Assembly (NCBI RefSeq): GCF_002113885.1
Contig: NW_018404202.1
Location: forward strand, 456,631 to 520,630
Reading direction: 5' to 3'
DNA from: Mizuhopecten yessoensis
Lineage: Eukaryota
Length of the DNA: 64,000 nt
Of this stretch, positions 28,579 to 61,260 are shown in pieces. The first letter of the stretch is position 1. Each line of letters opens with the position of its first letter. A program made the position numbers and the translations under genes. Below the pieces are notes generated by a model that did no database searches, had not been told where the DNA came from, and worked only from the letters and a program-made list of their open reading frames with translations.

Positions 28579-28657
28579 CGAATGATGACGACGATGACGA
28601 CGATGATAATGATCAGTAACAACCCTCCACCGCCCGCTGCTCCAGCAATTACCCCAA
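28579..28657 (-). CDS. Receptor gene A transmembrane exon (VGVIAGAAGGGGLLLIIIIVVIVVIIR)
   Basis: ttccag acceptor, CG|GTAGGT donor, 79 nt phase 1-2; hydrophobic helix homologous to 50645-50726. Confidence 0.85.
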
Positions 28658-38500: not shown

Positions 38501-40714
38501 GAATATCCAATAATGAATACATTCATAAAAAAGAATTTTAGCATAGGCCTTAATGTTGTGTTCTTTTTGAAACTACATGCATTTATACTGACACAGTCAG
38601 TTATAACCAGAAATATCTTCCTATCCATAATTATACTTTACTGTATATTGAATGCCGCAAATCAGTTTGTGTTTGTTGAAAAATTCAGACAGAAAATTTC
38701 TTTGTTTTTGAACTTGTGTTAAAATGACTTCAGAAGAACTTGTTAAAAGTAACATAAATGCATGAAATACATACACTACATCAAAGATATCCATAATGTG
38801 TCCATGCCTAGAATGTAGTTAAAAATTTATAAATGTGCACTGAATTGTAAGAATAAGAATAAACTTAAATTAAAATATTCTAAATAATGTGGTATAGCTG
38901 CAGAAAATTCGAGTTGGCTTCAGTTAATGTGTTGTCAACACTATATGATGACGCGTGTTAACAGTGACGTCACAGTCGCGTCACAACATGTTGTGAACGT
39001 CAATTCGGCATATTTCAATGCAAAATACGTATGCTTGGTATATATTTACGGACTTAACAGTATCAACTGATGCTATTTTTAAGCTAAGGACAAATAACCA
39101 AGCGCACGTACTACATGGAAACAATTTTCAGTTCGAGAAAAATGAAAATATCAAAATGATATATAGGACATCAAACGATTTCATCAGTTACATCGACTTG
39201 TAAAAAAATATAGAATTGTTTCTGAACATAAAAATCTGCCGGAGATACTACAAAAACACAAAGTGTTCATTGAAAATGTTGAATTAATTGTGTGTGCAAC
39301 AAAAGAACATCAATGCAATCACCGATCAACGCATGTTGCCGTTTTTTGCGAGCCTGTACGACCGGAAGGACGAATTCTTTTGAAGCCATCATATAGCATA
39401 GNGACTCAGCACTAATGTAATCCCATTCAAGGTAACATTGGCTCATCTCCGTCAGTATGTGTCTGTTAAGTTAAATTTAACTTAAGTTAATTTTTCTTGT
39501 ACTATTATGTTTATGATGTATTTTATACATACATGTTTATGTTACTCTCTGTGTTCGGTATGCTTGTCATGCGAGATCACTCTCCAAATACGTATGCAAT
39601 AGGTATGTTTTGTAACCATGTATACCTTGGCATTCTGTCGTTAAGTAAAGAAAAACATACTTTGGCTAAAAGCGAATGTTATCGTTAAACACCTTTCATA
39701 TGTATTTCATGTATCATTTCGAATGCAAAGAAAAGCATGCCTAGACTGAAAAATAATTATTACTTATACTTCTGTGTGTGTGTGCGTGTGTGTGTGTGTG
39801 TGTGTCTGTCTGTCTGTCTGTCTGTGTCTGTATGTCTGTCTGTCTGTATAATACAAGTATTATTGCTAATGGTGTAAAATGTATATTCATTAAACTTAGT
39901 AATAATTAGCATTTATGTAATCGCAATCAAGATAACATTGCCGAGGAGTTACCTCCCGTCTCTGTTAGTATGTTGCATGTCATGAGAGATCACTCTCCAC
40001 ATATGTATGTAATATTATGTATTATATTTATGTATGCCTATGGGTCGTAAGGCCTCCGGAATAAACTTGAATTGAATAGAACCAATTCACTCTCATGTTC
40101 CCGTACTTTCCGTACATGTGTTGCTAAAACGGCTCTCACTGCTCGGATGATCGCGAAGTGCCCGCTATTAACCATTTCACCAATTAAGATATGACTGTAA
40201 AGACATGTTGGGTGAATATTCATTTTATTCGTAAATTAATAATCCTGCGATCTACTTTTCATATTGTTGTTGTAAGCTGAGGAAAGTCTAAGTTTGACGT
40301 TGTTGTAATGATCACAGCTGCTCACAAAATATTAATGTCGTTGTTTAAAAGTAAACAAACACAAAACCTAATGAGTTTCCGTTGAAAATATTTTTCACAA
40401 TTGCTATATATTACTGGTACTAACTTCAGCCCATATGATATTTTGTGTTTGTGTCAGGTTAAAGACTAATCAGAGGTGATAACTACGTCATACGTGACTG
40501 TAGACTTGAGGTTCTGTACGGGAAATTCATTTCCGTGTATACTTACCCGCCCGGATTTTAAACATCGACGTGATTAACATCCGGTAATCGCGGTTCCTGT
40601 ACGGATGAACTATTTAGAAAGGTTTTAATATGATTTAAGTTTTTGGTTTAATAGGTGCGCATTGTCTGGTCTCTTTCTCTATTTTCATATTAAAGAAAAA
40701 TTATCAGGAGATTT

Positions 40715-43700
40715 AGTTTAAACTTTGTTTTATTTCAGTTCAAGCATGTTATTACAATGAACAGAGAAGACAAAGGGAAATAGGAACAAGTGTCACAGAC
40801 ACTTATGTAAACCTATCACCAAGTATACTAAACAGCAACTAATATATTCAGTACGTGATAACACCATTCATACACACAACACACGCATATATATATACAA
40901 ATAATTAATGGAAATAACAATAGTTTAAACTTCCTTAGAGTAAGGTGGTTGGGGTAAGATATATATTGTACAAGTTTACATTTCATATTATTCAGTTATA
41001 GAAAATCTGCCAGTTTTAAATATATAATTATGTACAGCTAGAAATATTAACTTATTTTCAGCCAATGAAAACGAATCATCTCCAAATAATAATAACTCCA
41101 AAGTAATATTATGGGGCAAACATTGTAGGTAGCGTCTTCTTATTTGATCGTACCTGTTACATTCAATAAAAAATGTGTATTGCCTTTGACTTCACCACAC
41201 TTGCATAATGGAGATGGAGCAATATTTTTAGCAAATAAATGACCATTTAAGGAGCTACACTCCATTCGTAGTCGTGCGTGATATATTTGGCCCTTGCGGG
41301 TACCAACGTTGTAATTGGTAGGCGTTTTCTTAGTATGTTGCTTGTCAAGATAAGATTTAAGGCAGAAGTAGACGGATTTGATCGAACGTTTTGTGGAAGA
41401 CTATTCCATTGGTCTATAACAGAAGGTAGAAATGACTGCTTATAAAAGGAAGTTTTGGAGTAATAAAGGTATGGTGGGAGTTTCTGGTATCATATCGATG
41501 CCCTTCCGATACAGTACTTGGGATAAGGCTATATACATATTCAGGTGTATATTGATAGAACATTTTATGGAACTGGATAGTTTTATGATTTTGCCTCCGA
41601 TCGAATAAACTGACCCAAGCTGATTCATTGGAAAGTTTATCAATGCTTACTAATTTAGTTGCACCTGTTACAATTCGAGCGGCTTCAATATTGAGGTTTT
41701 CAAGTTTCTTTCCCAACTCATTCGGAATGTTCCCCCACACTATATCTCCATACTAAAGTAGAGGTCTTATAAATGAAAAATATATTGATTGTAAAGTATT
41801 TCTATCAAGCTGGAATTTTAAGGTTCGCATGAGGTTAAGTTTAGGTGACGTTTTAAAGATGATGTAATTGACATGATCTGACCAACTACCGTTTGAGGAG
41901 AAAAAGAGTCCGAGGTGCTGATAGAAAGATACGTTCTTTATATGAACTTGGTTCATATGTAAGAGAGGGTGATTGGGAGGGTTTCTTTTCCTACCTATGA
42001 GGATAGTTTCAGATTTATTTGGGTTAAAGTCTACAAGCCACTGGCNNNNNNNNNNNNNNNNNNNNNNNNNNNNNNNNNNNNNNNNNNNNNNNNNNNNNNN
42101 NNNNNNNNNNNNNNNNNNNNNNNNNNNNNNNNNNNNNNNNNNNNNNNNNNNNNCCCCCCATATGCGATAACAATTCTCGTAATGCACCCCTATTCGGAAC
42201 ACCTCTACTTCTGTATTGGATATGGGAAGCACCCGAAGCGTTTCGAGTAAAATCCGGATTTGCGCTGTCAGTTTTTTTTTTTTTCAATTACACATCAATT
42301 TTAACCCTGGCCTACTCCTTTAAAGAAAAGGAGAGTGAATGTCATAAAGGACTCGGATAGTGAATAAATCATGGCGTTTCATCTGCAATGAATACTATAG
42401 TAGTAGTCGGACTAATAATTACTGACAGCAGCGATTTGAAACGATATTTATTCAGAATTGACTGAATATCCTCTTGTAATAATCTGTTTCAGTTGACATT
42501 GTTGATTAAATTATCTAATTGTTTTTCCTGTTGACTTGATTTTTTGTTACTTGAACATATGATAAAAAGTTTATAATATGACCATTTTGGGATATGATAT
42601 CCAAATGGTCATATAATAACATCTAATTATATCATACACAATAGCATTAATGTACACCAAGAAGAGCAGAGGTCCAATGATAGAGCCTTGGTATACCCCG
42701 GCATTAATAGATGCCCAATTAGAACTGCAATTATTTAAATTAACTCTTTGTTTTCTGTCAAGAAGATAATCTTCAAACCAGGTTTATAACTTTCCACATG
42801 TGCCAAGTTTGAAAATTTTGAAAAGAAGGCCTTGATGCCAGACACGGTCGAAAGCCTTGCTGATATCATAGAATACTGCTCGAATTTCTTTGCCTGAGTC
42901 TAGAGCTTTACCAAAGTCGTTAGATATACTAAGTAATTGGTTTATAGTAGAGTCACTGGGTGTGAAACCTGATTGACAGCTAGTAATAAGGCTATTTTGA
43001 CGAAGAAAATTGTACAAATATTTAAATATGCAGCGTTCAAATGCTTTCTTAAGACACTTATTAGAGATATGGGACGATAATTCTTGACGTCATCTTGTTT
43101 TCCTTTTTTATGAACAGGTATGACGTTAGCTCTTTTCCATGACGATGGAAATTGAGACATGGCAAGACATTTGTTAAAAACTTTCCACCATGACTTGGAA
43201 CGATTTGGGACAGATAGTTCTAACGACAGTTTGATGAGATACTTGTCTTTGGACTACCTAATTAGGTTGACACACTTACTGCGTATATGTCTAAACTCTA
43301 ACAGGTCACAATCTCTATTAGTCTGTTTTGCCCTTTTATTTTATTTTTTACGTTTTGAAATCAACTTTTTGATGTCGTGACACATCCAAGGTAGAGATCT
43401 CTACTTTTAACCACATTAGTTTTGTTTGGAATACAGACATGGGAAATTCTCTCTAATATGTCTGTCCGTATTCATTACCATCGTTTTATACTTTTCAAAA
43501 TCAGCGTGCTTGTACAGCCATACCTTACGATTGAAGGATTTAGCTGTAGTTTTGGTAAAATTAAAAATTCCAAATACAGGACAGTGATATCGTAATGGTT
43601 TGTCTAGGAACGATTCACCAACAAATGTTTGATTTAATATTGAAGGGTTGCTGATATCTAATGAGATCTAGCAGAGAGGAAGTATTTTCAGTAAAATGGG

Positions 43701-44180
43701 TACATTCGTCCACTAATTGTGTTAGGTTGTATGTATCGATTATGTTACATAAGTGACCCTTGTGAGGATGATTTTGAAGTAGGTTTACATTGAAATCTCC
43801 TGTTATAACGATATCGAAAACTCCTGTGTTAAAAGATCGATCAATTGATTGCTCAATTTTATTCCAGAGTTGGACATTTGAATTTAGAGGTCTGTAAAAT
43901 GTTCCAAAAAAAAAAGGACTTTTTAAAAGAAATTTAAATCCAAACAGTTTCAACACCATCCACGTTAAGTTAAGATCATTTCGAGTTTTAGTAATGAATT
44001 CATTGGATACGTACACTGAAATCCCTCCCCCTACTCTATCATTTCGATAAAAACATATAGGGCTGTGATAACTAGGAATGTTTAAAGAGATATCATTATC
44101 TGATTCGTGAAGCCACGTCTCAGTAAAGGACAGGATGCTACATTCTCGTAACTCTGTACGTAATATATCCAGGAGATTTG
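40715..44180 (-). mobile_element. Degenerate CR1-type LINE (APE endonuclease + RT), interrupted by a gap/insert at about 42046-42570
   Basis: ILSFTETWL, GTFYRP, ITGDFN, WKRANVIPVHKKG..NYRPISL, FYDISKAFDRVWH, QGSIIGPLLFLVYIN, HLGLFFSSNGSW, HARLRMECSSLNGHL; multiple frameshifts; AATAAA-containing 3' end near 40715. Confidence 0.9.
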
Positions 44181-50644: not shown

Positions 50645-50726
50645 CTTATTATTATAACTACTATCACAATGATAAAGATGATGACTAAAACAGCACCGCC
50701 ACCAGCAGCTCCGGCAATGACCCCAA
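50645..50726 (-). CDS. Receptor gene B transmembrane exon (VGVIAGAAGGGAVLVIIFIIVIVVIIIR)
   Basis: tttcag acceptor, AG|GTAGGT donor, 82 nt phase 1-2. Confidence 0.87.
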
Positions 50727-53287: not shown

Positions 53288-53566
53288 CTGTAATACCAAA
53301 TGTACCACATTATAGCGAATGCATTGATTCATAAAAGTAGGATGTTCGTTTGGGCTTTAAAATTTACTACCTCGATTTAAATGTTAGGGTACGAAGGAGC
53401 GAGAATGCAGCGGCGAGGGAACATTGATATTTGACCCTAACTGGACACCATATAAAGATAGTGTTTTTTGTAATTATCCTCAGTATTATAATTCTTTAGA
53501 ATATTCTAAATATGCATGTAAACCATATAATATTCTAGTAACGCACTGGTTATGTATCAAGTACTC

Positions 53567-53680
53567 ATAACTATCATGTTGATAACTATCATGTTGATAA
53601 CCATCATGTTAATAACTATCATATTGATAACTATCATGTTAATAACTATCATGTTAATAACTATCATGTTGATAACTATC
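53567..53680. repeat. 15-bp minisatellite
   Basis: GATAACTATCATGTT, about 7 copies. Confidence 0.9.
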
Positions 53681-55314
53681 AATGTTTGTTATATAGTAAC
53701 ATACTGTATCGAAACAATGTATACCTCGTTTTTGTAGATTATGCTATTTAAGCTTGTACATGTTTTCGCCATGTGTACATGCATATTTACCTATTTCATT
53801 TCTTTATATTATGTTAATATGTTGCCTGGGCTTTACGTGTAGATGACTTTGAATGCATTTTTTATTGTAAACATATATCTTGCCAAAAGTGGACAAAGGG
53901 ATTGGACACAAGTTATTACAGCTCGTCAACGCCTTCTCCCTATGTACATTTTCAATGACATTACAAAAGTGACAACAAGTATTTACAATTGTAAATACAA
54001 TTTGAACTCAAAATCTCTTGCTAGATTTAATAAAGTTTTGCATACATCTAAAAATGTTTCTGTAAATGTTCATAGAAAATTGAGAATTGCCAAACAAAAT
54101 TATTTCTAAATTGAACGCAATATTTAAATTATTTAAGTCTTGAACCAGAGTACGTCTGTCGTTTGTAAAAATGTGACATTCCAAAAAGTGGTGAAAGACA
54201 TTCTTACAAGGATGCCCACAATTACAAGCTGTACTCTCAACAAGGTTAACTCTAAAGAGGTCATAATTAAGGGAGCTTCACTGATGTCTGAGCTTAGTGT
54301 GCAAAATATCAAGTTTTACGATTTACGAATTAAAAGTAGATAGGTGTAATTGATTAAACAGGTTTTGAATCAATTTATAGCGGGCAAGGATGGAACCGAG
54401 TTTTCTAATTTATTCCAACTTTGAAGAGTAGAAGGTATAAAAGAAGAGTTAGTAAGAGATAATCTGAAAGGAGGAATCCTATAGGTATTATTGTTACGTA
54501 AGGCATAACGTGTTTTTTCCAGTTAAATGCGGTAAAAGATGGTTGAAGTATAGGTTATCATACAGAAATTAATATTTTATTATGCATCTTATACAATAGT
54601 TGAAGTTTTCCCTCGTTTCCTTCGATTAAATAGAGTTCATAGACCAGTTTCGTAATAAAAAGTATTAATAGGGGTATAAAAGGAAGTCCTGGTATAATGT
54701 GTGGTGAATTTTGGGGAGAGTTATCTCCCTTAGACCAATAACCCCGCCGACAACCTCGACGTGACATCTCGGCGCGGTTTCTTTACATCTTGCATTGACA
54801 TCCAGCTGATAACACGTGAGTGATTTTCCTCCGCATAGTCTTATAGATTTCGGGAGCTAAGAGCAGTTCCCAACTACATGTTGTGACGGTGTGCAATAGC
54901 ACACACCGAATTCACAGCAAATGCGAGCAGCTTCACGTTTGGCATTTTGAATGTTTACCCTATGGTATCTGTGATGCATCCTTTAATGTTTTGTGATTAT
55001 AACTCGTTGTTTTTAACGTCGTAAGTACTGAGCTAACGTTACTTCGTTTTAAAACAACGTAAAGTAAAACCTAGTGTGTTATCTCTTAGAAATGGTTGTG
55101 TTCTTGTACTTCTTATCGGTAATCTGTTATCATAGAAACATAATGTGTTTACTACGCTATCTTTTTAACAATTAAATTATCAAAAGTATCTATCAATTTG
55201 AAACTTCATATAGTGCGTGTAGAATGAGCACGCAAATAGTATACCACACTTTAAACAAACAAAAAACATGGCCTAACACAGCCAACATTGACATACATTG
55301 GTCGAGTATCATAC

Positions 55315-55368
55315 CGTTAGTGAAACCGTCCGAATTAGCTTTATCAGTGCATATAGTTGAGTTGATGC
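55315..55368 (-). CDS. Receptor gene B exon 2 (Cys micro-exon GINSTICTDKANSDGFTN)
   Basis: tttctttcag acceptor, G|GTATGA donor, 54 nt phase 1-1; homologous to gene A exon 2. Confidence 0.8.
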
Positions 55369-55736
55369 CTGAAAGAAATGATAACACACTTTCATCAGCT
55401 AATCAGTTTATTTTTCAATAAATGTATGGGTTTTGAGGACATTTACACAGTACAATATATCACTTCAGTTAACAAAACTCATTAATTTTAATGGAACTGC
55501 TCAAGAAAATTATATTCTATAAAATAACAAAACGATGACCCCGGAAGTATAATTTTACCGGAGCCAGCAGCTACACAACTCAATGTCTACTCAGGGGAAA
55601 TTCCTGTTTAGCTTGATTTTAAAATATCTATGGTAAATTGGTGTAAAGCAACCGAACGAAATGTTTTACAACTTTAGAAAAGTCCCAAGATTAAAACGAC
55701 AATAAACATAACACAATACTTCCTGTTTGTACTTAC

Positions 55737-55806
55737 CTTGATGATAGAAGCACGTCACTACCAATATATATAAACGTTTATATGATGTTTCCCTCCCGTC
55801 CCACAT
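55737..55806 (-). CDS. Receptor gene B exon 1 (signal peptide MWDGRETSYKRLYILVVTCFYHQ)
   Basis: ATG at 55806, 70 nt, phase-1 donor G|GTAAGT; resembles gene A exon 1. Confidence 0.72.
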
Positions 55807-57044
55807 GACACCTCTACGATCACTTTCCTCGCTCTATTTTTACACAATATGAACAGCAAGTTGTTTAAGATAATGCGTCCCTAGCATTGTTTACAAACCA
55901 CACAGACATTTTAGTACCAGAACGAAGCCTAAAAATAGATTTCAAAACAGGTTTCACGTCGGTATTATATACATGAATATAAAGTCTATTCAACGTCATC
56001 GGAGCGAGACGTCGCTTTCACAGAGGTCTTACGCAGGGGAGATAATGTTAACATCTAGCGCATAGCGTTAGAATTCAGCAGTATAGGTAATACATTTAAA
56101 CAGGTAAGTTAAATGAGAATATAAAATATTATAATAATAATGAATAAAATGTGCTTGATAATGTTTCTCACTTCTTTAATTAACATCTTTCATGCATTGA
56201 AGCCAACGACAAGTTACCACCAACAAATGGATTCTTCATCTAATATTACTGAATAATTACTGGTTCAATTTTATGATGGAATGTATGAAATGATCGCTAA
56301 AAATACGGGGTAAATAAACACATATTTACAGACGTAATAACGTCCTACTTCTATAACATAAACATTTCTTTTTAACATTCCACGAAATAAAATAAGTCCA
56401 GGAATGTATTGTAAAGGATACGAAAATGATTTCCTCAAATAGACACCTTCTAACGTGTGTAAAGGCCCTTTATTATGTAATATACCTACTGGTACTATAA
56501 GAATTTGTACTTGTGGTCTCAAGGTTTCACGAAATGACCCCACCCCTTATCCGAACGATTAGGATTATTAAATATTGTGTGTCGTTATGCCTAAGGCGTT
56601 CATCCTTTAGTACTATCATCACTTTCTATCACCATCTTTGTGGTGTATTCTTTTGTTGTATAGTGTGTGTGATGGTACTGTCCCGTAACGAGACAGTATA
56701 CACCGGGTCACGGTAGTTGGGTATTTGTTGTATAGTGTGTGTGATGGTACCGTCCCGTAACGAGACAGTATACACCACCTTCTCCTCCCGATATTACACG
56801 CTCCAGTAGGCAACACGTTGATCATCAGACACAATCCTACCCCGATTTATGTGTTTTATAAATAGATTCCCTTCTTACAAACTATAGCTCATATATGTAC
56901 CGGGAAGTAAAATATCGAGTTATCACTTTTGAATAAAGTATGTACAGTGTGCGTCGGGTATTGGAATTACTGTATATACAGCGTATGTAGGGAGGGAACA
57001 CGTCTGTACAACACATCAACTTTATACAAACTATACTACAGACA
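55807..57044. promoter_or_regulatory. Putative shared/bidirectional promoter region between divergent genes B and D
   Basis: 1.24 kb between opposing ATGs; TATAAAG near 55978, strong + donor CAG|GTAAGT at 56104 and acceptor at 57041 suggest a 5'UTR exon for D. Confidence 0.35.
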
Positions 57045-57096
57045 ATGAAGCTATGGGACACTGTCTCGGTTTGGACGGCTATCACTGTATACAGAG
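57045..57096 (+). CDS. Receptor gene D first coding exon (signal-like MKLWDTVSVWTAITVYR)
   Basis: acaATG just after a ctacag acceptor; 52 nt, phase-1 donor G|GTATGT; in frame with the 57988 exon; signal peptide only moderately hydrophobic. Confidence 0.55.
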
Positions 57097-57161
57097 GTAT
57101 GTACAAAACAGCAAAATAAACATGTCTATTAAACATTCCTTCAGGTTGGTAAGTATATGAA

Positions 57162-57593
57162 TTATGAGAAGTTTTTTTTTTACACAACCATTAACATTTT
57201 CTATGTGACGTTTCGATGACTAGTACGTTATGTACACTGTCACCTTCATCAGACAAATGACCAGTGAAGCGTATGCACACAAAGGTGTAAAATGTGTACG
57301 AGTTGTCCATAAAATCGATGTCGATTTCGGCTACGAGTTGTTGTATATGTACCGAAATGACTCCATTCAGCTACGCTTTGTTAACACTTGGTAGCTGAAT
57401 TGAGTCATTTCGTTACATATATATATAACAACTGGACATCGATTTTATGGACACCTCGTACACATTTTACACCCTTGTGTGAATACGCTTCATTGGTTAT
57501 TTATCTGATGAACGTGACAGTGTACATACCGTACTAGTCATCGAAACGTCACATAGACAATTGTATTGGCTGTGTAAAGGGAACTTCTCATAA
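57162..57593. mobile_element. ~430-bp palindromic MITE/foldback element in a gene D intron
   Basis: Arms TTATGAGAAGTT...CTATGTGACGTTTCGATGACTAGTACG... pair with ...CGTACTAGTCATCGAAACGTCACATAG...AACTTCTCATAA around a ~16-nt loop near 57375-57390. Confidence 0.8.
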
Positions 57594-57987
57594 GTAAAAC
57601 AAACAATGTCGACTGCATGGACTGAACACACTTGTGGGTCAATTTGAAAACTGATGACATTTGTTGAAATACTTGTATATTGGTTCTATATTACAATAGG
57701 TCCTTTTCATCTTCGGCCTTTCAAATATATCACTGTGTTAATTTTGTACGAAATAATATTAAACCAAAACTGGGAAATGTCTGTAAGATGTGAATGTCCC
57801 TGCTCCCCTCCAAAAAGTAACGGTGGCACTGACGTTCACCTTGACGTCCTGCAACAGTGTTTCATCTGTTAAGAATGTTCGCTTAAGCGACAACACTGAA
57901 TTTGGATGAGACAGGCAGCCAGATACAATATAAGGATCAACAATCTGACATAATCAACTTCTAATACATATAATCTTTACGTTTTAG

Positions 57988-58386
57988 CATCGGTCGTATC
58001 ATCAAGCTCAACTACAACGAACGCATTTACAACACAAACCAGCACATCGACATCCGTCTACACAACAACTGAACCGTTCACAACCACAACTCAACCCATC
58101 ACAACTACAACTACTGAACCCTTCACAACCACAACTCAACCCATCACAACTACAACAGAACTCTTTACTACGACAACATCACCCTTCACAACTACAACTA
58201 ATAGAGAAACATCCGTCACTCTCCCTACCGTAACGTCCACAGACACTACCACAGGAACAACTGTTATACCAACAACAAACATCTTTACTGGGACGAGCAC
58301 GTCACACGTCACAGTACCGTCTACTTCCGGGACAATCATTACAACGGTGTCATCACCCTCTTGTCCACCATACTCATTCCCATACG
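57988..58386 (+). CDS. Receptor gene D Thr/Ser-rich mucin exon
   Basis: gttttag acceptor, G|GTACGT donor, 399 nt phase 1-1 open frame (TTTEPFTTTTQPITTTT...CPPYSFPY); absent from the ORF track on +. Confidence 0.8.
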
Positions 58387-58777
58387 GTACGTATTCTATT
58401 CCATATATATACATATATAAACTACTTGCTCTATAAACGTATTTTGGATGCATTATTCGGTTATTAGGAGTTCTTTCTTAAAACGATTTTCTAACATGAC
58501 GTGTTACCATAGGATTCAGGACCTAGAACTTAGTTTCATCACCCGTTTCTTTACGGGGTTCAGGATGGCTTCCCTTACGTTTTGGTTTCTGCTTTGTTCT
58601 TGTGGTTGATTCATTTTTAAGACTTAGAATTCATATTTTGCTCGTAAAAGACAAGATACATGTATATTCTCTATTTTACTTACAACTTTACAAATATGTT
58701 CTGGACAATCAAACACATGCTATAACTAAGGATGGTTCCGTACACTAGTAAACATGACGTTTATGGTTATGTTACAG

Positions 58778-58856
58778 TCGCCGTTGTTGTCCCTATTGTG
58801 GTAACCTTACTGGTGGTGCTATTGGCGACCGGGGCCAACGTGGTTCTGTACAGACG
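58778..58856 (+). CDS. Receptor gene D transmembrane exon (VAVVVPIVVTLLVVLLATGANVVLYRR)
   Basis: gttacag acceptor, CG|GTAAGT donor, 79 nt phase 1-2, same phase pattern as the TM exons of A and B. Confidence 0.82.
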
Positions 58857-59630
58857 GTAAGTAACGAGGATATGTAAACACAACTTGTATCACGTCATAT
58901 TGTGGTAACCTTACTGGTGGTGCTACTGGCGACCGGGGCCTACGTGATTCTGTACAGACGATAAGTAACGAGGATTTGTAAACACAACTTGTATTACGTC
59001 ATATTGTGGTAACCTTACTGGTGGTGCTACTGGCGACCGGGGCCTACGTGGTTTTGTACAGACGGTAAGTAACGAGGATATGTAAACACAACTTGTATCA
59101 CGTCATATTGTGGTAACCTTACTGGGGGTGCTACTGACTACCGGGGCCAACCTGATTCTGTACAGACGGTAAGTAACGAGGTTATGTATACACAACTTGT
59201 GCCACGTCATAGTGTGGTAACCTTACAGGGGGTGCTACTGGCGACCGGGGCCAACGTGATTCTGTACAGACGGTTAGTAACGAGGATATGTTAACACAAC
59301 TTGTATCACGTCATATTGTGGTACCCTTACTGGTGGTGCTACTGGCGACCGGGGCCAACGTGATTCTGTACAGACGATAAGTAACGAGGATTTGTAAACA
59401 CAACTTGTATCACGTCATATTGTGGTAACCTTACTGGTGGTGCTACTGACTACCGGGGCCAACCTGATTCTGTACAGACGGTAAGTAACGAGGTTATGTA
59501 TACACAACTTGTGCCACGTCATAGTGTGGTAACCTTACAGGGGGTGCTACTGGCGACCGGGGCCAACGTGATTCTGTACAGACGGTTAGTAACGAGGATA
59601 TGTATACACAACTTGTGTCACGTCATATTG
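58794..59630 (+). repeat. 104-bp x8 tandem amplification of the gene D TM exon 3' part and donor
   Basis: Units start at 58794, 58898, 59002, 59106, 59210, 59314, 59418, 59522. Confidence 0.95.
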
Positions 59631-59731
59631 GAAATGTTGATGTTATATAGATGTTGAGTATCAGCACGAGACATAGGAAGTATTGATTTCATACAAACGT
59701 TAAATATCGTTACAAAGATACAAATTTATAT

Positions 59732-59894
59732 TTAAGCATTGAACTGCTTTCAGTCGGCATTCCTAGGCAATATGAATGCCAACTGGACAACGGCAAATTC
59801 AATGAAGCGCGCTAGCGCTTCATGTTAGATTTGCCTTTGTCAAGTTGGAATTCATTTTGGCTATGAATGCTTACTGAAAGCAGTTCAATACTTA
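59732..59894. mobile_element. ~160-bp palindromic MITE-like hairpin in the last intron of gene D
   Basis: TAAGCATTGAACTGCTTTCAGT...ATGAAGCGC / GCGCTTCAT...ACTGAAAGCAGTTCAATACTTA, TA at both ends. Confidence 0.75.
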
Positions 59895-60632
59895 CATTTA
59901 CGATTTTTGGAATCTGTTAATCTCATAGAAAATTTGATTGCATTTACTATTATTCAGCAATAGTTTAAATAATGTATGTATCGTGTATCCTTGCTCAATA
60001 AATAGAAAAGCCATCGCCAAGTGAGGGTCATTGGTATCCAACGTAACAATTATGACGTCACAATAATGATGACGTCAACAATCGGTCCAGGCATTCATAG
60101 CCTATATGAATGTCAACTTAAATTGGTAGGGTTATATACGTAGTGGCAATGCCATACGATGGTAAATATTTAAGAATGGTTGCTATTGTATCATGTAAGC
60201 TATCTGTCAGTTTATACGGCACATGGACATCTTTTTATGTGGATTAGTGGGGGTAGAATTCGGTATTATATTTTGGTATTTCGTCAATTACACTTCTTTA
60301 ACAATGTGAAGTCCAATACGTACTGCGTGTTGACTCACTATTGTCACTACACAAAATACGTTTTATATTTATTTCCATCCTTATACTGGACAACTAATTC
60401 TTAAACGTGGCGTCTCATTACTGAACATTTCTAAACAAATGGTTTTACGATCTCTTATAGATGTTTTGGATGCATATCTAAACGTTTTACAACAAAATGT
60501 GAAAAGGGGCAAAAACTGTCCGATTTTCATTTCTTGAAAATGTGTTCGTTGGTAAAAAAAAAAAAAAAAAAAAAAAAACTACATGTACACGTCTAGAAAT
60601 GTACACCCTAATCTTGTCTTTACATTTTGTAG

Positions 60633-60783
60633 ACGTCTCGCCCTGATACGAGAAACGAAAAATGTTGACGATGTCATGACGCCGACCCCTGCAACGTACG
60701 AAAGCCTTGACGTCAACCGACGAGAAAATCCCTCCGAAATGTACACTGTACTGGAGGGAGAACATGTCTACATTAACACTTAG
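60633..60783 (+). CDS. Receptor gene D cytoplasmic exon with ITAM-like YESL-x11-YTVL and terminal YINT*
   Basis: ttttgtag acceptor phase 2 with CTAAT branch-like site upstream; RLALIRETKNVDDVMTPTPATYESLDVNRRENPSEMYTVLEGEHVYINT*. Confidence 0.8.
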
Positions 60784-61260
60784 TACAATGTACACTGTAC
60801 TGGAGGGAGAACATGTCTACGTTAACACTTAGTACAATGTACACTGTACTGGAGGGAGAACATGTCTACGTTAACACTTAGTACAATGTACACTGTACTG
60901 GAGGGAGAACATGTCTACATTAACACTTAGTACAATGTACACTGTACTGGAGGGAGAACATGTCTACGTTAACACTTAGTACAATGTACACTGTACTGGA
61001 GGGAGAACATGTCTACATTAACACTTAGTACAATGTACACTGTACTGGAGGGAGAACATGTCTACGTTAACACTTAGTACAATGTACACTGTACTGGAGG
61101 GAGAACATGTCTACGTTAACACTTAGTACAATGTACACTGTACTGGAGGGAGAACATGTCTACNNNNNNNNNNNNNNNNNNNNGGGGCATGTCTACGTTA
61201 ACACTTAGTACAATGTACACGGGGGGGGGGGCATGTCTACGTTAACACTTAGTACAATGT
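60738..61260 (+). repeat. 49-bp tandem amplification of the gene D C-terminus and stop codon (at least 9 copies; N gap 61164-61183)
   Basis: Unit AATGTACACTGTACTGGAGGGAGAACATGTCTAC(A/G)TTAACACTTAGTAC. Confidence 0.95.

What the first reader, a model, noticed from the sequence alone, without database searches (positions are those of the whole stretch)
57045..60783. Gene D: mucin-only receptor with an ITAM-like tail, head-to-head with ITIM gene B
Seen: a 226-aa model, largely invisible in the ORF track, with no folded ectodomain (132-aa Thr/Ser stalk, one membrane-proximal Cys in CPPY) and a ~50-aa tail with YESL-x11-YTVL plus YINT (YxN). Its TM exon has the same phase 1-2 layout as in A and B and the same 79-nt length as in A. 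Established: Drosophila Draper signals through an ITAM-like motif with an 11-residue spacer, and YxN binds Grb2-type SH2 domains. Inference: an activating co-receptor/adaptor, possibly a disulfide dimer, co-regulated with B.
Basis: partly seen in the sequence, partly recalled or inferred. Interest (0 to 1): 0.75.

Follow-up and report, generated by a model that had tools for sequence, protein, structure and literature searches.

The report
Head-less scallop mucin receptor gene
Gene D is a real, expressed Yesso-scallop gene for a membrane protein made only of a sugar-bearing stalk, a membrane anchor and a short tail with three conserved tyrosines. It is the head-less member of a scallop-only receptor family, and its "ITAM-like" activating role is possible but not supported by its relatives.

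Summary
Observation confirmed. RNA reads and transcript contigs support all three splice junctions of the 4-exon, 226-aa model (57045-57096, 57988-58386, 58778-58856, 60633-60783). The YESL-x11-YTVL plus YINT tail, the single Cys and the 79-nt phase 1-2 TM exon are as described.

- D's TM and tail exons are not related to those of neighbours A and B. They belong to a second, short tail class with 11 tail exons in this genome.
- A profile search of 1.84 billion proteins found 7 relatives, all from three scallop genera and all uncharacterised.
- Elsewhere in the genome this short tail sits on heads 77-87% identical to the heads of A and B.
- D is therefore the head-less member of the short-tail class. 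No head exon or remnant was found. It is old, single-copy and absent from the protein databases.

The family conserves three tyrosines: Y[DE]S[LI]D, a second Tyr 14-15 residues on, and a C-terminal YxN. The second YxxL occurs only in D, so the ITAM reading is D-specific. A phosphotyrosine docking scaffold is the likeliest function. An activating role, dimer formation and co-regulation with B are untested.

Two tandem arrays start inside the TM and tail exons. The stalk carries an in-frame length polymorphism.

The scan noted this receptor family before on other DNA (s1-515149).

The parts
56857..56864 (+). TATAAATA box, about 30 nt upstream of the most 5' transcript evidence; putative core promoter of D
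   Evidence: Read from the sequence. The X1 transcript contig starts at 56891 and runs into exon 1 and exon 2 (table 8). Contigs cannot prove a start, so this is an inference.
56891..57044 (+). Minimum 5' UTR of D. It contains short upstream ORFs.
   Evidence: X1 record 1 covers 56891-57094 joined to 57986-58091, and X24 reads cover 56962-56985. The uORFs were read from the sequence.
57045..57096 (+). Exon 1 coding part: 17 codons plus 1 nt, phase 1. A weak signal peptide.
   Evidence: It has the same 52-nt size and phase as the signal exon of paralogue LOC110452985, with 7/17 aa identical (shuffle p about 0.001). Its peak 9-residue hydropathy is 1.76, against 2.3-2.7 in relatives.
57200..57560 (.). 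High-copy palindromic (MITE-like) repeat inside intron 1. Not part of the mRNA.
   Evidence: depth reaches thousands in every run, with 'opposite strands' and 'goes back' joints and many loose ends. The exon 1 to exon 2 junction skips it.
57988..58386 (+). Exon 2: 132-aa Thr/Ser/Pro mucin stalk ending in SCPPYSFPY. Phase 1-1.
   Evidence: The membrane-proximal Cys plus Y-P motif matches the stalk ends of relatives.
58062..58198 (+). 45-nt (15-aa) in-frame repeat x3.1 within the stalk. Length-polymorphic.
   Evidence: In one search, 86 X24 reads show 'goes back 90' (58151 to 58062), which means two extra units (+30 aa) in that animal.
58778..58856 (+). Exon 3: 79-nt TM exon, phase 1 to 2, followed by basic residues.
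   Evidence: It is 79% aa identical to the TM exons of the short-tail paralogues at C3514 about 10 kb and on C76349, and 78% nt identical to C3514:10367-10447.
58794..59630 (+). 104-nt tandem array x8. Each unit is the last 63 nt of the TM exon, the 5' splice site and 41 nt of intron. Only the first donor is used.
   Evidence: RNA depth falls from about 14 to below 1 after 58980, and the only junction is 58856|60633.
60633..60783 (+). Exon 4 coding part: 49-aa tail with YESLD, YTVL and C-terminal YINT, then the stop.
   Evidence: It is homologous over its full length to 10 other tail exons, each starting in the same phase with RL[AT][LM].
60738..61163 (+). 49-nt tandem array x8.7, continuing after the N gap at 61165-61183. 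The first unit encodes the last 15 residues plus the stop. The other units lie in the 3' UTR.
   Evidence: X24 depth of 20-30 continues across 60772-61160, and an X1 contig runs on into unique sequence beyond the array.
55737..55806 (-). First coding exon (signal peptide) of neighbouring gene B, divergent from D
   Evidence: the joint 55368|55737 is CT..AC on the + strand, that is GT..AG on the minus strand. It has 6 X24 reads, 1 X19 read and 1 X2 contig.
55315..55368 (-). Second coding exon of gene B (GINSTICTDKANSDGFTN), matching the N-terminus of P0002/P0012

Best explanation
D is an intact, transcribed, single-copy gene of the Yesso scallop. It encodes a type I membrane protein built from four exon modules: a weak signal peptide, an O-glycosylation-type Thr/Ser/Pro stalk, a TM helix and a 49-aa cytoplasmic tail.

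Shown here:
- The TM and tail exons are homologous to the short-tail class of a scallop-restricted receptor family. The end of the stalk and the signal exon probably are too.
- In that family, cysteine-rich heads are combined with either a long tail (genes A and B in this window) or this short tail. UniRef calls the heads CUB-like, but Pfam gave no match here.
- D has the family's exon phases but no head exon. It presents only a mucin stalk with one unpaired membrane-proximal Cys.
- D's tail keeps 10 of the 11 residues that are invariant in its paralogues, including all three tyrosines: Y[DE]S[LI]D, a second Tyr 14-15 residues later, and YxN at the C-terminus.

Inferred mechanism: the tail is a phosphotyrosine docking scaffold. 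A Src-family kinase would phosphorylate it and SH2 proteins would read it. A Grb2/Drk-type adaptor would bind the terminal pYxN, and a YxxL-binding SH2 protein would bind the first site. D may pair through its Cys, or through the conserved polar Asn in its TM helix, with itself or with head-bearing relatives. It would then act as a ligand-blind signalling or modulating subunit.

Whether the net output is activating is open.
For: Gene model and expression: one search gives three GT..AG junctions with 17, 18 and 35 reads in X24. An X1 contig spans exons 2-3-4 and another spans exons 1-2.

Family membership:
- 11 tail exons with the same start phase, and 10 invariant columns including Y22, Y37, N48 and T49.
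- TM exon 48-79% identical to those of paralogues.
- 78% nt identity for the TM exon.
- signal exon of the same size and phase, 7/17 aa identical.

Restriction to scallops: searches give 7 hits among 1.84e9 representatives, from Mizuhopecten, Pecten and Argopecten.

Two tail classes on shared heads: (87% and 77% head identity), and for gene order on C3514.

No head: best tblastn E above 0.7 across 53300-61160; exon 1 spliced directly to exon 2.

Constraint:
- D keeps 10 of 11 paralogue-invariant columns against 10 of 34 variable ones (Fisher p = 5e-4).
- the introns are single-copy while the exons remain recognisable.
- the only listed tail variant (60669 C>T) is synonymous.

Cross-genus conservation of YDS[LI]D, the second Tyr and YVN.

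Pathway precedent in bivalves: an oyster ITAM receptor binds CgSyk (PMC6994640).
Against: - No phosphorylation, binding or localisation data exist.
- The signal peptide is weak. It has Asp at position 5 and peak hydropathy of 1.76, and the 5' UTR carries short uORFs, so protein output and topology are unproven.
- YESL and YTVL also fit YxxPhi sorting signals.
- D is the most divergent tail of the family (38-44% identity), which could mean relaxed constraint.
- No orthologue was found in other scallops. Absence from annotated proteins does not show absence from those genomes.
- Pairing through the Cys or the TM Asn is pure inference.
Confidence: 0.6

Rival explanations
1. D is an activating ITAM-type adaptor or co-receptor. 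Doubly phosphorylated YESL-x11-YTVL would recruit a tandem-SH2 Syk/Shark kinase, as Draper does. D would work as a disulfide dimer opposite the ITIM-type gene B.
For: - The pattern is present.
- Only 1.3% of shuffles of D's tail give the loose pattern.
- Bivalves have Syk that binds an ITAM receptor.
- D has a single unpaired ectodomain Cys.
- D and B are divergent neighbours, and both are detected in X24.
Against: - The second YxxL is unique to D. All 9 paralogues and the Pecten and Argopecten relatives have Y[AE][DE][TMI], 14 residues after the first Tyr.
- The canonical x6-8 spacing is not met.
- There is no acidic residue before Y1.
- The TM helix has no charged residue.
- Y1 in most paralogues fits the ITIM consensus VxYxx[LI].
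- No orthologue is available to test conservation.
Confidence: 0.15
2. D is a membrane mucin whose tail tyrosines act mainly as YxxPhi sorting or endocytosis signals. It would be a barrier, anti-adhesive or trafficking protein of the CD164/endolyn or CD43 type, not a signalling subunit.
For: - The ectodomain is 66% Ser/Thr/Pro with a variable-length repeat polymorphism typical of mucins.
- YESL, YTVL and the family's YDS[LI] all fit YxxPhi.
Against: - The most conserved tail features are not sorting-type. These are the invariant Asn at +2 of the last Tyr (YxN) and the Ser and Asp around Y1 (Y-x-S-x-D).
- The second Tyr in paralogues (YADT, YEEM) is not YxxPhi in most copies.
- The same tail is mounted on folded receptor heads.
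Confidence: 0.15
3. D is a transcribed relic: a partial copy that lost its head and is drifting, with no selected function.
For: - D has the most divergent tail in the family and a weakened signal peptide.
- Tandem arrays invade two exons.
- The gene is absent from protein annotation.
- A clearly decaying relative exists at C3514 about 38 kb, with a stop in its signal exon and a frameshift in its head.
Against: - The reading frame is open across four exons with correct phases.
- Splicing is efficient, and D has 3-6 times more junction reads than B in X24.
- D keeps 10 of the 11 family-invariant residues (p = 5e-4).
- Both arrays leave the first, coding copy intact.
- The stalk length variant is in frame.
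- The introns have diverged beyond recognition while the exons have not.
Confidence: 0.1

Closest known systems
Scallop short-tail receptors with Cys-rich (CUB-like) heads: XP_021357446, OWF48497/XP_021357449 and OWF36788 (M. yessoensis), XP_033731474 (Pecten maximus), XP_069135574 (Argopecten irradians). All are 'uncharacterized'.
   Same: The TM exon and tail exon are homologous. The exon phases are the same, and the signal exon has the same size. Both have a membrane-proximal Cys/Y-P motif, three conserved tyrosines and a polar Asn/His in the TM helix.
   Different: D has no head exon. Its stalk exon does not start with the family's 'VTC' motif. Its tail is 38-44% identical, has one extra residue between Y1 and Y2, reads YTVL instead of Y[AE][DE]x, has Ala instead of Val at -2 of Y1, and stops directly after YxNT.
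Drosophila Draper (CED-1/MEGF10) ITAM
   Same: Two YxxL/I motifs with the tyrosines 15 residues apart (Draper Y934/Y949), plus further tail tyrosines.
   Different: There is no homology. Draper has EGF/EMI ectodomains and a long tail. D's second YxxL is not conserved in its own family.
Vertebrate ITAM adaptors DAP12, FcR-gamma and CD3-zeta (own knowledge)
   Same: A small type I protein without a ligand-binding domain, with a membrane-proximal Cys and a Tyr-motif tail. It is linked to a family with paired tail types.
   Different: Those adaptors have very short ectodomains, a charged Asp in the TM helix and a canonical x6-8 ITAM. D has a 132-aa mucin stalk, an uncharged TM helix and x11 spacing.
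Transmembrane mucins and adaptors with pYxN sites: the MUC1 cytoplasmic tail (YTNP, Grb2), CD43, PSGL-1, LAT (own knowledge)
   Same: A mucin-only ectodomain with variable-length repeats, a single pass through the membrane, and a short tail with a Grb2-type YxN.
   Different: There is no sequence relationship. D has no SEA domain and no palmitoylation CxxC motif. D derives from a receptor family by absence of the head.
Head-less relative in the scallop four-Ig receptor cluster (earlier scan note s1-504971)
   Same: The same genome shows another receptor family with a head-less paralogue that shares the family tail.
   Different: It is a different family (Ig heads) with a different tail. Not examined here.

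Membership tests
Scallop short-tail receptor family (tail class of XP_021357446 / OWF48497) | Tail exon in phase 2 starting RL[AT][LM], with Y[DE]S[LI]D, E-x-P, a second Tyr and a C-terminal YxN | tested here: met
   all 10 invariant columns are present in D; reciprocal match, E = 2e-4, over the full length.
Scallop short-tail receptor family (tail class of XP_021357446 / OWF48497) | Homologous TM exon (VVVP...ANV[IV]LY[RK]RR), about 79 nt, phase 1 to 2 | tested here: met
   48-79% aa identity; 78% nt identity; junctions.
Scallop short-tail receptor family (tail class of XP_021357446 / OWF48497) | Cys-rich folded head exon between the signal and stalk exons | tested here: not met
   no head-like sequence in 53300-61160; exon 1 is spliced directly to the stalk exon. 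D is a head-less derivative, not a full member by architecture.
Canonical ITAM | Yxx[LI]-x(6-8)-Yxx[LI], often with an acidic residue before the first Tyr | tested here: not met
   the spacer is 11 and the residues before Y1 are P-A-T.
ITAM-like, Draper type | Yxx[LI]-x(6-12)-Yxx[LI] | tested here: met
   the regex is true for D only. Draper's Y934/Y949 have the same spacing.
ITAM-like, Draper type | Both motifs conserved in relatives | tested here: not met
   the second motif is Y[AE][DE][TMI] in all 9 paralogues and in the Pecten and Argopecten proteins. D orthologues are not available.
ITAM-like, Draper type | Binds the tandem SH2 domains of Syk/Shark when doubly phosphorylated | not testable with these tools
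   Needs a peptide pull-down or a binding assay.
ITIM | [SIVL]xYxx[IVL] | tested here: not met
   the D hexamers are ATYESL, EMYTVL and HVYINT, none with S/I/V/L at -2. Most paralogues (VHYDSL, VVYDSI) do meet it.
DAP12/FcR-gamma-type adaptor | Charged residue in the TM helix and a very short ectodomain | tested here: not met
   the TM segment has no D/E/K/R; the stalk is 132 aa.
Transmembrane mucin (architecture only) | Ser/Thr/Pro-rich repeat ectodomain with length polymorphism, a single TM helix and a signal peptide | tested here: inconclusive
   The composition and the variable-length repeat are met. The signal peptide is weak and glycosylation is untested.

The most novel reading that the evidence does not exclude
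D is an invertebrate counterpart of DAP12/FcR-gamma that arose by loss of the head from a receptor gene. It would be a ligand-blind subunit linked by a disulfide bond, or through the TM Asn, to head-bearing receptors of the same family. It would supply them with a working Draper-spaced ITAM that recruits Syk. That would give scallops an activating partner next to the ITIM-type gene B.
Probability: 0.1. Interest if true: 0.7.

Novelty: new variant of a known kind. Interest (0 to 1): 0.42.

Why it matters
Bivalves lack adaptive immunity but expand lineage-specific surface receptor families.

This locus shows one scallop-only family using the same heads with two different tyrosine-motif tails. 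It also shows a stable, expressed, head-less member that no protein database lists.

If the short tail proves to signal, the family would be an independent invention of the paired-receptor logic known from vertebrate NK and myeloid receptors. D would then be a natural tail-only tool to dissect it.

The gene is also a clean example of how spliced, low-complexity genes escape ORF-based and automated annotation.

Tried and rejected
1. Word search of 5.8 billion proteins with the stalk exon gave no hit at E <= 1e-5. D is therefore not annotated at 73-233 aa.
2. Pfam scans of the D exons and of the A/B-type heads gave nothing significant. This includes no CUB match, despite UniRef's automatic name.
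3. tblastn of seven family heads against 53300-61160 gave only noise, so there is no hidden or decayed head exon.
4. A search for a recent parent copy with D's 5' region, stalk end plus intron 2, and intron 3 plus tail found only D itself and an allelic haplotig, C80120.
5. D's TM peptide against the whole window showed no similarity to the TM exons of A or B. The idea that D is a truncated copy of its neighbours was rejected.
6. I considered whether the extra copies in the 104-nt array act as alternative exons or donors. I rejected this because RNA depth collapses after the first copy, and read-through meets a stop codon immediately.
Exons were searched separately, so no whole-protein SignalP/TM prediction or exact-sequence look-up was done.
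8. The N gap at 61165-61183 was left as it is.
9. A literature search for scallop ITAM/ITIM receptors found no paper on this family.
Full report
**Organism and setting.** Cluster look-ups name the relatives as Mizuhopecten yessoensis proteins on the same assembly. The window is contig C875:456631-520630 of that genome. The window is AT-rich and full of minisatellites.

**1.

- 57045-57096: 17 codons plus 1 nt.
- 57988-58386: the stalk, phase 1-1.
- 58778-58856: the 79-nt TM exon, phase 1 to 2.
- 60633-60783: a 49-aa tail and the stop.

*RNA support.* I laid two transcript-contig runs (X1, X2) and two raw RNA-seq runs (X19, X24) on 55200-61160. Every junction is a GT..AG intron with read support:
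- 57096|57988: 17 reads from 13 starts in X24, 1 read in X19, and contigs in X1 and X2.
- 58386|58778: 18 reads in X24 and an X1 contig.
- 58856|60633: 35 reads in X24, 1 read in X19, and the same X1 contig, which therefore links exons 2, 3 and 4.
- No listed joint or loose end attaches exon 1 or exon 2 to anything upstream.

*Transcript ends.* An X1 contig starts at 56891, about 30 nt below a TATAAATA at 56857-56864. The 5' UTR contains short uORFs, and the start codon has A at -3.

*Variants.* Exonic differences in the reads are synonymous: 57080, 58076 and 60669.

*Stalk.* It is 42% Thr and 66% Ser+Thr+Pro. It has one Cys, eight residues before the membrane, and no N-glycosylation sequon.

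A's TM exon is 28579-28657 (79 nt) and B's is 50645-50726 (82 nt). Both are phase 1 to 2.

**2.

*Two tandem arrays begin inside coding exons.*
- A 104-nt unit x8 (58794-59630) repeats the last 63 nt of the TM exon, its 5' splice site and 41 nt of intron. RNA uses only the first donor, and depth drops to below 1 afterwards. Reading through the first donor meets a stop codon at once.
- A 49-nt unit x8.7 (60738-61163) runs into the N gap at 61165-61183, which I left untouched. It repeats the last 15 codons plus the stop. Only the first unit is coding, and the rest is transcribed 3' UTR.
- Both arrays are flanked by 5-nt microhomologies (TATTG and AATGT). This fits slippage expansion in a minisatellite-rich genome.
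- Neither array alters the protein.

*Stalk polymorphism.* The stalk contains a 45-nt in-frame repeat. The X24 animal carries two extra units, adding 30 aa (86 reads). This is a length polymorphism of the kind seen in mucins.

*Intron 1.* It holds a very high-copy palindromic element at about 57200-57560.

**3. What D is related to**

*Not to A or B.* D's TM peptide finds nothing in A or B.

*A second tail class.* The tail exon matches, over its full length and in the same phase, ten other tail exons in the genome. They lie on contigs C3514 (three copies), C2007 (two), C1496 (two), C73392, C76349 and C82515. The TM exon upstream of each is 48-79% identical to D's (78% at the DNA level).

*Gene order on C3514.* These exons lie downstream of a signal exon, a Cys-rich head exon and a mucin stalk exon.

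*Shared heads.* The heads are close relatives of those of A and B. B's head is 87% identical to the head of P0002 (OWF48497), and A's head is 77% identical to the head of P0003 (OWF36788). A and B, however, carry long tails. The family therefore mounts shared heads on two tail classes, and D belongs to the short class. An earlier follow-up of this scan reported the same design on other DNA (s1-515149). I re-derived it here only as far as these identities.

*Distribution.* A profile of the ten tails, searched against 1.84 billion representative proteins, found seven true relatives. All come from Mizuhopecten, Pecten maximus and Argopecten irradians, and all are uncharacterised. D itself is not among them, and the stalk exon found nothing in the word search. 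D is therefore unannotated, and no D orthologue is on record.

**4. D lacks the head cleanly**

- Seven family heads find nothing better than E = 0.7 between B's head exon and D's 3' end.
- D's exon 1 has exactly the size (52 nt) and phase of the signal exon of LOC110452985. It shares 7 of 17 residues with it (p about 0.001 by shuffling).
- D's stalk ends with the same Cys/Tyr-Pro arrangement just before VVVP.
- In D both the signal exon and the stalk exon end in phase 1. A head exon lying between them would therefore be a phase 1-1 exon, so its absence keeps the reading frame. The exon phases of the paralogues were not measured separately.
- D's introns, stalk end and 5' region are single-copy, apart from an allelic haplotig. 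D is therefore old, not a fresh partial duplicate.
- By contrast, the copy at C3514 about 38 kb has a stop in its signal exon and a frameshifted head. It is annotated only as a 156-aa stalk-TM-tail fragment.

**5. The tail**

*Conservation.* Alignment A1 has ten invariant positions, numbered on D: R1, L2, Y22, S24, D26, E31, P33, Y37, N48 and T49. Y46 is nearly invariant. Of the 11 columns invariant among the nine paralogues, D keeps 10, and the eleventh is a D-to-E change. Of the 34 variable columns, D matches the majority in only 10 (Fisher p = 5e-4). This is selective retention and argues for constraint. The same core holds in Pecten and Argopecten: YDS[LI]D, the second Tyr and YVN.

- Y1 is VxYDS[LI] in most paralogues, which fits the ITIM consensus. 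In D it is ATYESL.
- Y2 is YADT, YEEM or YEEI in relatives and YTVL only in D.
- The Y1-to-Y2 distance is 14 in relatives and 15 in D.

*The ITAM question.* D alone fits Yxx[LI]-x6-12-Yxx[LI], a pattern that 1.3% of shuffles of its tail also give. Its 15-residue spacing does equal that of Draper's Y934/Y949, which are necessary and sufficient for Shark recruitment (10.1101/198986). An oyster ITAM receptor binds CgSyk (PMC6994640). The ITAM reading is therefore possible in principle, but it rests on a D-specific feature.

*The most conserved element.* This is the C-terminal YxN. From own knowledge of SH2 specificity, it is a Grb2-type site. In two paralogue lineages the YxNT unit is duplicated in frame.

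*TM helix.* It is uncharged but carries a conserved Pro and a conserved Asn (His in one subgroup) near the inner leaflet.

**6. Mechanism**

*Shown:* an expressed gene, family membership of the TM and tail exons, absence of a head, and conservation of the three tyrosines.

*Inferred:*
- The tail acts as a phosphotyrosine docking scaffold.
- D may pair through its single Cys, or through the TM Asn, with itself or with head-bearing relatives. My own count from the sequences gives odd ectodomain Cys numbers in those relatives (9 in P0001, 11 in P0002).
- D would then be a ligand-blind signalling or modulating subunit.

*Rivals:* a true Draper-type ITAM adaptor, a mucin with YxxPhi sorting signals, or a transcribed relic.

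*Caveats:* the signal peptide is weak (Asp at position 5, hydropathy 1.76 against 2.3-2.7 in relatives), the 5' UTR has uORFs, and there are no protein data.

**7. Neighbourhood**

B's first coding exon is 55737-55806 on the minus strand, and its second is 55315-55368. The splice between them is read-supported. The ATGs of B and D are 1.24 kb apart and divergent, so a shared promoter region is plausible. In X24 both genes are detected: D with 17-35 junction reads and B with 6. In X19 both are near zero. Two runs cannot show co-regulation.

**8. Limits**

No whole-protein look-up, SignalP-type prediction or fold was run.
- Other scallop genomes cannot be searched with these tools, so conservation of the Tyr spacing in orthologues remains untested.
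- The reads tools were used once each, as allowed.

**Verdict.** The gene and its features are real. The family context changes the interpretation from an ITAM adaptor paired with B to the head-less member of the short-tail class of a scallop-specific two-tail receptor family. It is moderately interesting, and its function is untested.

Noticed in passing
window 57200-57560 (intron 1 of D): A palindromic, MITE-like element with enormous RNA depth in all four runs (up to about 27,000 summed word depth in X2). It shows many 'opposite strands' and 'goes back' joints and many loose ends, as expected of a very high-copy transcribed repeat.
   Followed up: partly
window 59737-59890 and 59640-60150 (intron 3 of D): A second inverted-repeat element, with raised depth (400-600) in run X2 only and several non-canonical joints. 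Probably another dispersed repeat.
   Followed up: no
G000:C80120:1-1925: A small contig 97-98.5% identical to window 55287-57272, covering the B-D intergenic region and D exon 1. It is an uncollapsed allelic haplotig. It differs by the 72-nt indel at 56651-56724 that an X2 contig also shows.
   Followed up: yes
G000:C3514:37915-43816 (loci L027, L025): A short-tail paralogue, annotated as the 156-aa XP_021357424, has a stop codon in its signal exon (43766-43816) and a head split over two frames (40595-41073). It is a decaying copy whose stalk-TM-tail part is still called a gene.
   Followed up: partly
G000:C82515:6970-7119, C1496:985660-985809 and C1496:973383-973532 (L037, L038, L040): These short-tail paralogues carry an in-frame tandem duplication of the 'TNAGRMYxNT' unit, which gives two YxNT sites. 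The same end of the exon is expanded out of frame (49 nt) in D.
   Followed up: partly
window 55315-55368 and 55737-55806, minus strand: The first two coding exons of gene B (signal peptide and a short Cys-containing linker) lie 2-2.5 kb upstream of its head exon. They are read-supported, and they extend B to within about 1.1 kb of D's promoter.
   Followed up: yes
TM exons of the short-tail class (window 58778-58856; P0001-P0007): A conserved Pro (VVVP) and a conserved polar Asn (His in the P0001/P0005 subgroup) lie in an otherwise aliphatic TM helix, four to five residues before the basic stop-transfer. This could be a helix-helix association site.
   Followed up: no
G000:C3514:47271-48873, plus strand: A further head exon (63% identical to P0001) and stalk exon lie in the opposite orientation inside the C3514 cluster. 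The cluster therefore contains divergently arranged members, like B and D.
   Followed up: no
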